This document shows, in pieces, positions 8,601 through 11,600 of a stretch of DNA of 64,000 nucleotides. Source of the stretch: Podarcis vaucheri (taxonomy: Eukaryota). Position numbers and translations under genes: made by a program. Below the pieces are notes generated by a model. The model did no database searches and was not told the DNA's origin. It saw only the letters and a list, made by a program, of their open reading frames with translations. How positions within the stretch are numbered: position 1 is the stretch's first letter; the number at the start of each line of letters is the position of its first letter. Location: NCBI GenBank assembly GCA_965113315.1, contig OZ220370.1. The stretch is one strand, 5' to 3'.

Positions 8601-11600
8601 TTATTTTTTTCCTGGACAAAGTGTGTGTGTGGGTTGCGAAGTGTGTGCAGAATCATTAGCACACCCTACAAGCTATGCCTTGAACAATGTGAATTGGATT
8701 TTGGGGGGGATGTGTTGAGTTGTGGGGAACCATCAACACAGTGCCCTGAAATTTGTCCCATTCTAGAACTAAGCTCCCCTGTAAGATTCATTTTATCTTC
8801 ATCACCACCACAACCCATTTATCACCAGTTCATCTTCAAAGTCAGTGTGATTTACAGTTCTGGGAAGGACTCTCCTCAAACAAAAAGCATTTTATGTATA
8901 AATCTAACTAACATTAATGACAAAGACCAGTAACTCCAGGGAGTGAAGTGGCTCAATGAGTTTTCAGCCTGATTTGAAATGTCATTAAAGACGTAATGGC
9001 TTGGGAATAGTTAAAATTTGTGAAGTGCAAATGTGTTGAATCGTAACTGGAACCAGTATCAGCATCCCTACCACAGACAGGAAAGTCAGTCGCATTTTAG
9101 CCTTGCACACAAAAATCCCCCCTCTGGGACATGGCCAGGAAAGCCCAGCACCATGGTCATGTCAGTAGCACTTCAGTGATGAGATTTCCCATCACCAGAA
9201 AGGTTGATCTCCATTCTGTCATGAGCTGAAGCCTGGGTGAACAGGAGTAACCGAAATAAAAAAATTCCTTCCAGTAAACATGTATCTGAAGAAGTGTGCA
9301 TGCACACGAAAGCTCATACCAAGAACTAACTTTGTTGGTCTTTAAGGTGCTACTGGAAGGAATTTTTTTATTTTGACTATGGCAGACCAACACGGCTACC
9401 TATCTGTAACAGGAGTAACCGAGTGTGCTTGAGTTGGACCCAGGAAATCCGGGCAGGTGCTGAGGTCCTCTAATTGGCAAAGCAAATTTGCTGAAGTACT
9501 TGATTGGCACCATGGAGGTCAGGGGTATATGCATACAGCTGATGGGAACTAAATTCTGGTAACAGCAGCATCATATTGCCTAATCAACCCAGTCCTTTTG
9601 TTTAGTCAAAGGCACACCTTGGAAATGGGCTACTTTTGTAGCCCAGTTTTCAAGAATAAGTGACATAAAACCAACACAAGACTACATAACTATGATCTTA
9701 TACTTAAAACTTCTTCATATTTATGTTGCTTTCCTACAGTATTCGCTTTCATTTGCATTAAAGTTCTTATTCAATGTTATGTTGCTTATTCATGTATTCA
9801 ATAACAGAAATGCAGGGCAACGTCTATGACCACCCAACATTTTTATGTTTTAATTTATATTCAGATTACTTCTTCTGTTCAATATTATTATAGTTTCCAA
9901 AGCACTATGCACAAAGAACAGATCAAAGCCTAGTTCCTCAAATCGCATTCAAGTAGGCATTTACACACACCATAAAATTTGGTCAATGGCAAAAGTAACA
10001 TAAAAAGCACAAGAAACACTGGTAATCCTACATAGCACTGCCTGTATAGAGATATATCCTGGCTATGTATTAATGCACAAAGGCACTTAAAGCTCCACAG
10101 CAAGGCAAGTGTTTAAAGCATTTATGTAACATTAATTTTGCTATCCTCACATTAATCTTATTTGATGGAACTTTTGGTCTTTGTAGAAGTACTGAATTTC
10201 CTGTTTTTGGAATTCAAAGGGTGATGTGTGAGGAAAATAAGAATGAACTTCCTGTGTTATGAATTGGAATTAATACATGAATGTAGGCTAAGCTATCACT
10301 TTGCTAGTCTATTTATTATGTGGAACCCAGTGAATAATCCCTCTTGGATATATTGTGGTTAAGACTGATAACATATTATGAATGTAATTAATATCAGCAC
10401 ACAAAAGTTAATTGATGCATTTTCCTTTTTCAGTTTGAATGATTTAATTAAATTTCCATGTGCTTAAAAAGAACCATATTTATGTCTACCAAACCAGATA
10501 ATTTTCATTGTATAAGCAACTTTTTTTTAAAAAAATATTATTCTTCAAATGTAAAAGCTATTATTCATTGTCTGCACAGATGGTGTCTAATAGGTGCTAA
10601 AATGAATCTTTATTTCTCCTCCTCTCCTTATTTTACCTCGTTAATGAAGTCTCCAATGTCCCCAGGATGAGGAGCTGCTGATCTGACCGGATATTGAGGT
10701 TCTGCATGGATAGGTCTTTCATCAAGTCGTCTTATTCCAACAGGTTTGATGGCATCTGGTTCTATAGTGTCTGGTTGCTGGAGCTGACTTAAATCATAGT
10801 CCTGTGAAAGTAATAGGCAATCACAATGTTTTGAGAATTTAGCAAGGGAAATTCCATTCCTACAAATGAATGCATATATTGAGAATTATAAAACCAATTC
10901 AGAATGTATCTTGAATTTATCTTCATCTCACACACATATCCATTTAGAGTAAAACAGAATGCTTATTGCCTCCATAGTGTCCCTGTCTCCATTTACAATG
11001 TCATTCCAGTTGGCTGCTTTGTGCTACACCTCATCCATTTTCTACTGCGAAACAGATTCAGAAGTAGCATTCATCTGTGACTAAACAATATGCCTAGTAA
11101 AATACCTATTTAATATATGCAGAAAGTTGCCAATATTGACTCCTCTGTAACACAAATAGAATGCTAGACATATTCATTCTGAAACACAAACAAGGACAGA
11201 ACTCTGCAGATTTGGATAACATATTTGGAGAATGGCAAAGTCCTGTAGATGCTTTTGGACAACATGTTCCATCAGCTCCAACCAACACTGGTAATGGTTA
11301 GGGATGATGCAAGTTGTAATCCAACCAAAAGTTTGTGTGTTTAAAAAAAAAAAAAATTGGGAAAGCATTCAGCCATGTGATATATCACATGCAATGCAAG
11401 GTCATAGAGTCCATGAATTACCATGTCATCTGCCGCTTGCATAGGCTACCTTTTAGATGTAAGATGGAGAGGAACTGTCAAGATAGCTTTTCATCAACAC
11501 CAAACTGGATGACATCCTGTGCGACCACAAATAATCTTCAGGCGAAAGTGCCCATCTAATATTCAGCCACCATTTTAATTAAAAATAGATGGTTCTAGAA

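What the first reader, a model, noticed from the sequence alone, without database searches (positions are those of the whole stretch)
9240..9422. Minimal hammerhead ribozyme in a Penelope-like insertion, clamped inside a perfect 23-bp hairpin in CDH2 intron 15
Seen: a 15-bp direct repeat (aacaggagtaaccga, 9240-9254 and 9408-9422) brackets a ~153-bp insert. Within it, 9254-9276 is the exact reverse complement of 9351-9373. The loop holds GUAU-CUGAAGA-A-GUGUGCAUGCACAC-GAAA-GCUC-AUAC: hammerhead core boxes, stem I (9282-9285/9316-9319), a 14-nt palindromic stem II and a loop-less palindromic stem III (AGCU), with a CUC cleavage triplet ending at 9315. Established: Penelope-like retroelements carry minimal type I hammerheads in their pseudo-LTRs; those with a palindromic stem III cleave as dimers; inverted partial pLTRs are typical of Penelope insertions. 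Inference: the catalytic core looks intact. The motif is on the + strand, antisense to CDH2, so it would cut an antisense transcript but not the CDH2 pre-mRNA. The enclosing 23-bp stem could stabilise the weak 4-bp stem I, and two palindromic stems would favour dimerisation in trans with other genomic copies.
Basis: partly seen in the sequence, partly recalled or inferred. Interest (0 to 1): 0.82.

Follow-up and report, generated by a model that had tools for sequence, protein, structure and literature searches.

The report
Young Penelope-type insertion with minimal hammerhead
This is one recent copy, among many thousands in this reptile genome, of the end piece of a Penelope-like retrotransposon that carries the already described "minimal" hammerhead ribozyme motif; it is real but ordinary and probably inert here.

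Summary
A 15-bp direct repeat (9240-9254 / 9408-9422) brackets a 153-bp insert, a perfect 23-bp inverted repeat lies at 9254-9276 / 9351-9373, and a complete minimal type-I hammerhead motif lies at 9282-9319 (+).

A close relative (organism D) carries the exact empty site with one repeat copy, so this is a true, young transposition.

Positions 9281-9410 belong to a very abundant repeat: about 10,900 contigs at least 85% alike in one run. The left arm is not part of that repeat.

The motif has every feature published for hammerheads of metazoan Penelope-like elements (PLEs). The insertion has the PLE signature: a short inverted 5' stub, a 34-37-nt "tail" at one end only, and a target duplication.

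Not supported: the hairpin as a clamp that helps the ribozyme. Folding predicts about 500-fold less ribozyme-competent structure inside the hairpin. RNA reads from other copies show no ends at the cleavage site. Rfam models do not detect the motif.

The link to a reverse-transcriptase ORF and actual cleavage could not be tested.

The scan holds more than 30 similar first-reader notes on this genome. This is a known kind; interest is low.

The parts
9240..9254 (.). Left copy of the target-site duplication (AACAGGAGTAACCGA).
   Evidence: Exact direct repeat. In organism D a 3864-nt contig joins 9239 to 9408, skipping 168 nt, with 15 nt that fit either side (table 5).
9254..9276 (-). Inverted 5' stub, the reverse complement of element positions 9351-9373. 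It is the left arm of the 23-bp hairpin.
   Evidence: 100% complementary. Summed contig depth here is about 1.5e3, against 1e6-4e6 over 9282-9395, so the stub is not part of the repeat family at this position (table 2). An inverted 5'-truncated copy is a published PLE trait (PMC8557442).
9277..9280 (.). Filler bases AACA at the junction between the inverted stub and the direct copy.
   Evidence: Family likeness starts at 9281/9282 (loose ends, table 7). The family consensus upstream (...TTTCAG) differs from these bases.
9281..9410 (+). Direct copy of the abundant PLE-type 3' module: hammerhead, downstream stem-loop region and tail.
   Evidence: 10,900 contigs (X1), 3,282 (X14) and 7,465 (X5) at least 85% alike map only here. 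Boundaries lie at 9281/9282 and 9410.
9282..9285 (+). Hammerhead helix I, 5' strand (GUAU).
   Evidence: Pairs with 9316-9319.
9286..9292 (+). Core box C3-A9 (CUGAAGA).
   Evidence: Read. No variant at 10% or more among family copies (table 3).
9293..9293 (+). Unpaired A between core position 9 and 10.1.
   Evidence: Read. This extra nucleotide is a conserved trait of PLE minimal hammerheads (PMC4209133). Poseidon_Ac has a U here.
9294..9307 (+). Helix II, a 14-nt palindrome GUGUGCAUGCACAC with G10.1 and C11.1 at its ends. On its own it folds as 5 bp plus the loop CAUG.
   Evidence: No variant at 10% or more among copies.
9308..9315 (+). G12 A13 A14, then A15.1-G15.2-C16.2-U16.1 (a loop-less palindromic helix III), then C17. 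Predicted cleavage follows 9315.
   Evidence: Read. 13-25% of family depth reads U at 9315, which the hammerhead rule (H17) allows (table 3).
9316..9319 (+). Helix I, 3' strand (AUAC).
   Evidence: The A>G variant at 9318 in RNA reads would turn the U-A pair into U.G.
9333..9392 (+). Predicted long-range stem, UGUUGGUCU (9333-9341) with the AC-rich AGACCAACA (9384-9392). It encloses the right arm.
   Evidence: Minimum-free-energy fold of 9277-9410. PAc starts reverse transcription in an AC-rich stem-loop (PMC11167929). The analogy is an inference.
9351..9373 (+). Right arm of the hairpin. It is an ordinary internal part of the family sequence.
   Evidence: High family depth.
9374..9410 (+). 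"Tail": 34-37 nt of the direct copy beyond the point where the inverted stub begins.
   Evidence: Coordinates. PLE tails are 30-40 bp and are often at one end only (PMC8557442). The tail corresponds to the stretch between two reverse-transcription start sites (PMC11167929).
9408..9422 (.). Right copy of the target-site duplication. Its first 3 nt (AAC) are also the last 3 nt of family likeness.
10645..10805 (-). Context: the CDH2 coding exon upstream (in gene sense) of the intron that holds the insert. Bounds are approximate.
   Evidence: Translation contains [55 protein letters not shown].
5456..5650 (-). Context: coding part of the last CDH2 exon. Bounds are approximate.
   Evidence: Translation [27 protein letters not shown]...[17 protein letters not shown] followed by a stop.

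Best explanation
A young insertion made by Penelope-like-element (PLE) machinery, about 153 bp plus a 12-15-bp target duplication, in the last intron of CDH2 and antisense to the gene.

Its body (9281-9410) is the conserved 3' module of a very abundant squamate PLE-type family. The module holds a minimal type-I hammerhead at 9282-9319, a stem-loop region with an AC-rich strand, and a 34-37-nt tail.

The 23-nt left arm is a short inverted cDNA stub of the same module. It starts 34-37 nt short of the module's end. The likeliest origin (inferred) is priming on both target strands at the two alternative internal reverse-transcription start sites, as described for the anole element PAc, followed by joining with 4 filler bases. 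The perfect hairpin is therefore a by-product of integration, not an adaptation.

In source elements the hammerhead, with no helix III of its own, is thought to work only as a dimer or with the element's protein, to process PLE RNA. At this solitary intronic copy it is most likely an inert relic.

Shown: the repeats, the motif, the empty site, family abundance and boundaries, and orientation relative to CDH2.

Inferred: PLE mobilisation, the two-start-site origin of stub and tail, and lack of activity.
For: - Exact direct and inverted repeats.
- Empty site in organism D: contig record 17 joins 9239 to 9408, with 15 nt that fit both sides and only 5 base differences and 1 gap (a 1-nt insertion) in about 730 flanking bases. 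Contigs of X1 bridge both junctions with 0 differences.
- Family abundance, with boundaries at 9281/9282 and 9410. The left arm is absent from the family. "Opposite strands" joints at 9281 in other copies show that inverted 5' pieces recur.
- The descriptor hit is unique in the window, with 0 hits in 300 shuffles.
- Poseidon_Ac reads CUGAGGA-U-G...C-GAAA-CG-UC, the same layout.
- Published PLE insertion traits match: 5' truncation, an adjacent inverted 5'-truncated copy, and a 30-40-bp tail often at one end only (PMC8557442).
- PAc cuts and extends both DNA strands and starts reverse transcription at two internal sites, with the tail between them, 111-118 nt into the ORF (PMC11167929). Here the ends lie 116-119 and 81-82 nt from core A9.
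- The only variable sites inside the motif (C17>U; A>G giving U.G) are compatible with the structure.
Against: - No reverse transcriptase / GIY-YIG ORF could be linked to this module. No full-length copy lies in the window, and no eukaryotic genome collection was available.
- There is no extended sequence likeness to Poseidon_Ac beyond the motif layout and an AC-rich motif (by eye).
- Rfam hammerhead models give no match, even at E<=10 on 61 nt.
- Conservation of the ribozyme part relative to the rest of the module is only marginal: 0 of 33 against 10 of 96 variable sites, p = 0.046, or 0.087 with DNA runs only. No compensatory double changes were seen.
- The family's sharp 5' boundary at 9281/9282 is not explained by random 5' truncation. 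It could mean a short non-autonomous element.
- Loose ends at 9374/9375 in other copies look mostly like T-run length variation, so a tail-less family end there is not shown.
Confidence: 0.85

Rival explanations
1. The insert is a solo monomer of a short non-autonomous, PLE-derived hammerhead element (a non-LTR retrozyme or SINE-like unit of about 130 nt). It would be mobilised in trans by PLE proteins, rather than being a 5'-truncated copy of an autonomous PLE.
For: - The family has a sharp common 5' boundary at 9281/9282 with heterogeneous upstream sequence (table 7).
- This copy starts exactly there.
- "Goes back" joints (9371->9282, 9362->9282 and 9331->9282, each with one base between) show partial tandem units in other copies (table 5c).
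- Retrozymes of vertebrates derive from PLE pseudo-LTRs and average 176 bp in reptiles (bioRxiv 10.64898/2026.07.22.740005).
Against: - This locus holds a single unit, not a tandem.
- About half of DNA contigs, and 82% agreement among 348 RNA reads, continue upstream of 9281 with a shared sequence, as expected for longer elements.
- No circular-RNA or cleavage-site ends were seen (table 6).
Confidence: 0.3
2. The hairpin-enclosed hammerhead is a working ribozyme at this locus. The 23-bp stem would hold helix I together, or two palindromic stems would drive dimers in trans, cutting an antisense transcript of the CDH2 intron.
For: - The core is intact by sequence.
- Co-folding two copies predicts a strong dimer, -32.2 against 2 x -7.6 kcal/mol.
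- PLE minimal hammerheads cleave weakly as dimers in vitro (PMC4209133).
Against: - The ensemble fraction of ribozyme-competent folds falls from about 0.08 (element alone) to about 1.6e-4 inside the hairpin. The minimum-free-energy fold pairs CUGAAGA with 9339-9350.
- The predicted dimer is held by an intermolecular helix II, which leaves helix III unformed.
- In an RNA run of organism D there are no reads on the intron flanks and no pile of read ends at 9315/9316 among about 800-fold depth from other copies.
- The anole study likewise found no RNA-seq ends at the cleavage site, and no cleavage without the element's protein (PMC11167929).
- The arm is private to this copy.
Confidence: 0.05
3. 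The insert is a DNA-transposon relic (MITE) with terminal inverted repeats, or an unrelated SINE that contains a chance hammerhead-like string.
For: It is a short insert with an inverted repeat and a target duplication. Rfam gives no hammerhead match.
Against: - The right arm lies 34 nt inside the insert, so the repeats are not terminal.
- The left arm is not part of the family.
- A 12-15-bp duplication is long for DNA transposons (own knowledge).
- The descriptor gives 0 hits in 300 shuffles.
- Four traits that are not part of the search descriptor match the PLE motif.
Confidence: 0.02

Closest known systems
Minimal hammerhead ribozymes (min-HHR) of metazoan Penelope-like elements (Cervera & De la Pena 2014, PMC4209133; Lunse, Weinberg & Breaker 2016/17, cited in PMC6765202)
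   Same: - Type I layout with the full conserved core.
- 4-bp helix I and a long helix II closed by G10.1-C11.1.
[quoted passage not shown]
- No loop 3, and a palindromic 15.2/16.2 dinucleotide.
- Thousands of dispersed copies per genome, mostly single motifs from truncated elements.
- Reported in reptiles (turtle and snakes).
   Different: - The helix II sequence is a perfect 14-nt palindrome.
- This copy is enclosed by a private 23-bp inverted repeat.
- No covariation could be shown here, and activity was not tested.
Poseidon_Ac / PAc, the Penelope/Poseidon element of Anolis carolinensis (Frangieh et al. 2024, PMC11167929)
   Same: - Squamate host.
- The hammerhead has the same order of parts: CUGANGA, one extra nucleotide, G...C helix II, GAAA, a palindromic dinucleotide, then UC.
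- An AC-rich motif (ACAACAC there, ACCAACAC here) lies about 100-118 nt downstream.
- The element's 3' end lies about 116-119 nt from core A9, against reverse-transcription starts at 111-118 in PAc.
- A tail of 30-40 nt lies between two start sites.
- Both target strands are cut and extended in vitro, which fits inverted stubs.
- No RNA-seq ends were found at the cleavage site.
   Different: - No extended sequence likeness was seen by eye.
- Helix II is 14 nt here against 19 nt in PAc.
- In this copy the frame from the ATG in loop II stops after 9 codons, so no ORF follows.
- The target site here is not AT-rich.
Non-LTR retrozymes of animals (Cervera & De la Pena 2020, PMC7229834; Li et al. 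2026 preprint)
   Same: A type-I hammerhead in a short non-coding unit derived from PLE pseudo-LTRs. Some family copies are partial tandems.
   Different: This locus is a single unit with a target duplication and an inverted stub. There is no evidence of circular RNA. The published retrozymes are depleted from introns, whereas this copy is intronic.
L1 5' inversions by twin priming
   Same: An inverted 5' segment joined to a direct 3' segment within one pair of target duplications.
   Different: Here the inverted piece duplicates sequence also present in the direct piece. It begins at an internal site 34-37 nt from the 3' end, as expected of the two internal start sites of PLEs rather than poly(A) priming.

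Membership tests
Minimal type-I hammerhead of metazoan PLEs | Conserved core: C3 U4 G5 A6 N7 G8 A9, G12 A13 A14, A15.1-U16.1, H17 | tested here: met
   CUGAAGA at 9286-9292, GAA at 9308-9310, A9311...U9314, C9315.
Minimal type-I hammerhead of metazoan PLEs | Open helix I of 4-5 bp flanking the motif (type I) | tested here: met
   GUAU 9282-9285 with AUAC 9316-9319. Present in the minimum-free-energy fold of the isolated motif and of 9277-9410.
Minimal type-I hammerhead of metazoan PLEs | [quoted passage not shown] | tested here: met
   A9293. Trait stated in PMC4209133.
Minimal type-I hammerhead of metazoan PLEs | Long helix II closed by G10.1-C11.1 | tested here: met
   G9294...C9307. 5 bp plus a 4-nt loop when folded alone, 7 bp formally.
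Minimal type-I hammerhead of metazoan PLEs | No or minimal helix III, with palindromic 15.2/16.2 | tested here: met
   A-GC-U at 9311-9314 with no loop.
Minimal type-I hammerhead of metazoan PLEs | Large families of copies per genome, with covariation in the helices | tested here: inconclusive
   The huge family is shown. No site in helix II varies at 10% or more, and helix I shows only one U-A to U.G change, so there are no compensatory double changes. Individual copies could not be fetched.
Minimal type-I hammerhead of metazoan PLEs | Mg2+-dependent self-cleavage after position 17, as a dimer or with protein | not testable with these tools
   Indirect only: no pile of RNA read ends at 9315/9316 (table 6).
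Rfam hammerhead families (types I, II, III, HH9, HH10) | Score against the covariance models | tested here: not met
   No match at E<=10 on 1.1 kb or on 61 nt, and none at gathering score on the window. This is expected, because those models include a helix III hairpin and loop contacts that minimal motifs lack.
Penelope-like element insertion | Linked ORF with a telomerase-like reverse transcriptase and a GIY-YIG endonuclease in full-length relatives | not testable with these tools
   No other copy in the window. Pattern scans of the metagenome and viral collections found nothing. No eukaryotic genome collection was available.
Penelope-like element insertion | Hammerhead motif in the terminal repeat, at the ORF junction | tested here: met
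   The motif sits at the 5' edge of the conserved module and has the same layout as in Poseidon_Ac.
Penelope-like element insertion | 5'-truncated copy with an adjacent inverted 5'-truncated copy | tested here: met
   Inverted stub 9254-9276 next to direct copy 9281-9410. Trait stated in PMC8557442.
Penelope-like element insertion | 30-40-bp tail, often at one end only | tested here: met
   The direct copy runs 34-37 nt beyond the start of the stub. Trait stated in PMC8557442 and PMC11167929.
Penelope-like element insertion | Target-site duplication, with an empty site in relatives | tested here: met
   15-nt repeat. The organism D contig skips 168 nt, with 15 nt that fit both sides.
Penelope-like element insertion | Sequence likeness to a curated PLE consensus (Repbase/Dfam) | tested here: inconclusive
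   Only Poseidon_Ac could be read, and only by eye. Motif layout and an AC-rich motif are shared, with no extended likeness.
Non-LTR retrozyme | Tandem units, each with a complete type-I hammerhead | tested here: not met
   There is a single unit at this locus. Some other family copies show tandem joints, so the family may include such arrays.
MITE / DNA transposon | Inverted repeats at both termini, next to a short fixed duplication | tested here: not met
   The right arm ends 34 nt inside the insert, and the left arm is absent from the family.

The most novel reading that the evidence does not exclude
With more than 10,000 near-identical modules that are transcribed in both orientations, the palindromic helices II and III might let copies pair in trans and cleave as dimers in vivo. 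Dispersed copies such as this one would then mark host or antisense transcripts for cutting, and the private 23-bp hairpin would act as an off-switch at this locus.
Probability: 0.04. Interest if true: 0.6.

Novelty: already known. Interest (0 to 1): 0.13.

Why it matters
This copy matters little by itself. It is one of many thousands of copies of a kind described since 2014, and the scan has flagged the same kind many times in this genome.

Three modest values remain:
- It is a clean, dated example (present in organism A, empty in organism D) of a miniature PLE insertion. Its stub and tail fit the two internal reverse-transcription start sites and the both-strand priming seen in vitro for the anole element. 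A genome-wide survey of such fold-back copies could test that model in vivo.
- It shows that Rfam models miss these motifs, so automated annotation will not label them.
- It places a perfect 23-bp RNA hairpin and an AAUAAA hexamer into the sense strand of the last CDH2 intron of one species. That is a possible, untested source of species-specific RNA processing differences.

Tried and rejected
- **Rfam cmscan** on 1.1 kb and on 61 nt at E<=10, and on the whole window at gathering score: no hammerhead match. Only chance hits came up, such as MIR319, caused by the hairpin.
- **Other copies in the window**, by pattern with 3 mismatches and by sensitive blastn: none.
- **Exact-pattern scans** of the metagenome and viral contig collections for the module (GAAAGCTYATRC...TCTYTAAGGTGC): 0 hits. 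No copies could be aligned, so no covariance model or covariation count was possible.
- **Published sequences**: the supplement of PMC4209133 is not held, and the Lunse et al. paper is not held. I could not check whether this exact sequence variant has been printed before.
- **Stronger conservation of the ribozyme part**: only marginal, p = 0.046 or 0.087, and not significant when the whole 38-nt motif is compared with the rest.
- **Alternative pairing as a selected switch**: the pairing of CUGAAGA with 9339-9350 is unlikely to be selected. About 30% of family depth reads C at 9342, which would break it, with no matching change in the core.
- **MITE and chance-motif readings**: rejected (see rival explanations).
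- **Expression of this locus**: could not be judged. The only raw RNA run laid belongs to organism D, which lacks the insert. It gave no reads on the intron flanks.
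Full report
**1. The observation**

AACAGGAGTAACCGA occurs exactly at 9240-9254 and 9408-9422. Positions 9254-9276 are the exact reverse complement of 9351-9373, 23 nt with 74 nt between the arms.

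Between the arms lies GUAU-CUGAAGA-A-GUGUGCAUGCACAC-GAAA-GC-UC-AUAC, at 9282-9319 on the + strand.

I wrote the published minimal-hammerhead descriptor as a script. It requires CUGANGA, 0-1 extra nucleotide, a helix II of at least 4 bp, GAAA, a palindromic insert, U, H, and a helix I of at least 4 bp. It hits only this place on both strands of the window, and never in 300 dinucleotide-preserving shuffles. The hairpin transcript folds far better than shuffles, z = -8.6.

**2. It is a real, young transposition**

I laid Logan contigs of three DNA runs and raw reads of one RNA run on 8900-9800 at 85% likeness.

- In organism D, one 3864-nt contig covers 8900-9239 and continues at 9408-9800. It skips exactly 168 nt, with 15 nt that fit either side of the joint. 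This is the empty site with one copy of the duplication.
- That contig differs from the window at only 5 bases and 1 gap (a 1-nt insertion) in about 730 flanking positions. The insertion is therefore younger than a split of under 1% divergence, or it was still polymorphic then.
- Contigs of run X1 (organism A, 0.94 of the words; possibly the sample the window was assembled from) bridge both junctions with no differences.
- The state in organism G could not be read, because no contig spans the site.

**3. It is a copy of a very abundant repeat, and the left arm is not part of it**

- Over 9282-9410, 10,900 (X1), 3,282 (X14) and 7,465 (X5) contigs are at least 85% alike. Summed depth is in the millions, against about 20-60 in the flanks.
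- Likeness begins sharply at 9281/9282 and ends at 9410.
- Depth over 9241-9271 is about a thousand times lower, so the left arm belongs to this insertion only.
- Other copies show "opposite strands" joints at 9281 to various internal points. They also show "goes back" joints such as 9371->9282. Inverted 5' pieces and partial tandems therefore recur in the family.
- No second copy lies in the window.

**4. The motif is the known minimal hammerhead of Penelope-like elements**

Cervera and De la Pena (PMC4209133) define these motifs as type I, with a short helix I (4-5 bp) and a long helix II. They list traits that were not in their search descriptor but recur:
- a G10.1-C11.1 pair;
- palindromic positions 15.2-16.2.

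All are present here: A9293, G9294 and C9307, and G9312 with C9313. The paper reports such motifs in turtle and snakes.

I read the Poseidon_Ac consensus of Anolis carolinensis (File S1 of PMC11167929). Its junction reads CUGAGGA-U-G...C-GAAA-CG-UC, the same order of parts. Beyond that I saw no extended likeness.

Rfam's hammerhead models give nothing, even at E<=10 on 61 nt. Those models include helix III and loop contacts that minimal motifs lack. This is a failed test for the Rfam families, not for the minimal motif.

**5. The insertion anatomy is the PLE signature**

Craig et al. (PMC8557442) describe PLE insertions as follows:
- strongly 5'-truncated;
- often with an inverted 5'-truncated copy directly at the 5' end;
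- with a 30-40-bp tail that is often present at one end only.

Frangieh et al. (PMC11167929) report for the anole protein that:
- it cuts and extends both DNA strands;
- it starts reverse transcription at two internal RNA sites in an AC-rich stem-loop, 111-118 nt into the ORF;
- the tail is the stretch between the two sites.

Here the direct copy ends 116-119 nt from core A9 (9292), and the inverted stub starts at 81-82 nt. That is 34-37 nt short, the length of a tail. An AC-rich strand, AGACCAACA at 9384-9392, is predicted to pair with 9333-9341.

My reading is that one cDNA was primed from each target strand, one at each start site. The top-strand cDNA reached only 22-23 nt before the two were joined with 4 filler bases. 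This step is inferred, not shown. The loose ends at 9374/9375 in other copies look mostly like T-run length variation, so a family-wide tail-less end is not demonstrated.

**6. Does the hairpin help the ribozyme?**

Probably not. Results:

| RNA folded | Result |
|---|---|
| Isolated motif (9282-9319) | Helices I and II form the minimum-free-energy fold |
| Element without the left arm (9277-9410) | About 8% of the ensemble keeps helices I and II with an unpaired core |
| Hairpin transcript (9254-9373) | About 0.016% does so; the best fold pairs CUGAAGA with 9339-9350 |
| Two copies co-folded | Strong dimer, but through an intermolecular helix II, which leaves helix III unformed |

These are thermodynamic predictions, not measurements.

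**7. Expression and cleavage**

- The RNA run (organism D, which lacks this insert) gave 1,393 reads on the module. 97% of them run on into unlike sequence, so they come from other copies.
- Both orientations are about equal.
- No place shows a pile of read starts or ends, including 9315/9316. Frangieh et al. report the same for the anole, and cleavage in vitro only when the protein is added.
- The intron flanks had no reads.
- Expression of this locus in organism A is untested.

**8. Conservation**

- Among sites where at least 10% of depth reads another letter, none lies in 9282-9314 and ten lie in 9315-9410. Fisher p is 0.046, or 0.087 with DNA runs only. This is only suggestive.
- The two variable sites within the motif are C17>U, which is allowed, and A9318>G, which turns a U-A pair into U.G.
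- The T at 9333 is private to this copy; about 99% of family depth reads A.

**9. Gene context**

Translations on the - strand give the N-cadherin segments in order. The EC5/TM exon lies at about 16600-16800, and a cytoplasmic exon at about 15070-15190. The exon ending in ...GDIGDFINE lies at about 10645-10805, and the last coding exon (...[10 protein letters not shown], then a stop) at about 5456-5650. The number "intron 15" rests on the usual 16-exon structure of CDH2 (own knowledge).

**10. Verdict**

This is an ordinary member of a known kind. First-reader notes of this scan list more than 30 similar Penelope/hammerhead fold-back insertions elsewhere in this genome. I used them only as leads, and independently shows the abundance.

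The masked N run at 4554-4708 was left alone.

Noticed in passing
window 9281-9282 (family boundary): The repeat family has a sharp common 5' boundary at the first base of helix I, not at the predicted cleavage site. Upstream sequence is heterogeneous in DNA contigs. It agrees at 0.82 in 348 RNA reads of organism D (consensus ending ...GGCAACTTCTGTTTCAG).
   Followed up: partly
window 9282-9371 (other copies, table 5c): "Goes back" joints (9371->9282, 9362->9282 and 9331->9282, each with a single G between) indicate partial tandem arrays of a 50-90-nt hammerhead unit elsewhere in the genome, like a retrozyme.
   Followed up: no
window 9367-9372 (- strand) and 9255-9260 (+ strand): Each arm of the hairpin carries an AATAAA hexamer on one strand. 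The insert therefore puts AAUAAA and a perfect 23-bp hairpin into the sense pre-mRNA of the last CDH2 intron in this species only.
   Followed up: no
window 9333-9341 / 9384-9392: A perfect 9-bp long-range pairing (UGUUGGUCU with AGACCAACA) is predicted in the module. From memory only, turtle copies of a similar repeat carry changes on both strands that would keep the pairing. This is a lead for a covariation test.
   Followed up: partly
window 9300-9329 (+): An ATG sits in the loop of helix II, where the anole element's ORF starts. In this copy that frame ends at TAA 9327-9329 after 9 codons, so no ORF follows.
   Followed up: partly
window 9333: This copy has T where about 99% of family depth reads A. 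It is either a private substitution since insertion or a rare source lineage.
   Followed up: no
window 5456-23722 (- strand): CDH2 (N-cadherin) exons from EC3 to the stop codon lie on the - strand. The protein segments are nearly identical to those of other amniotes.
   Followed up: partly
window 4554-4708: A run of 155 N (gap or masked) lies in the CDH2 3' region.
   Followed up: no
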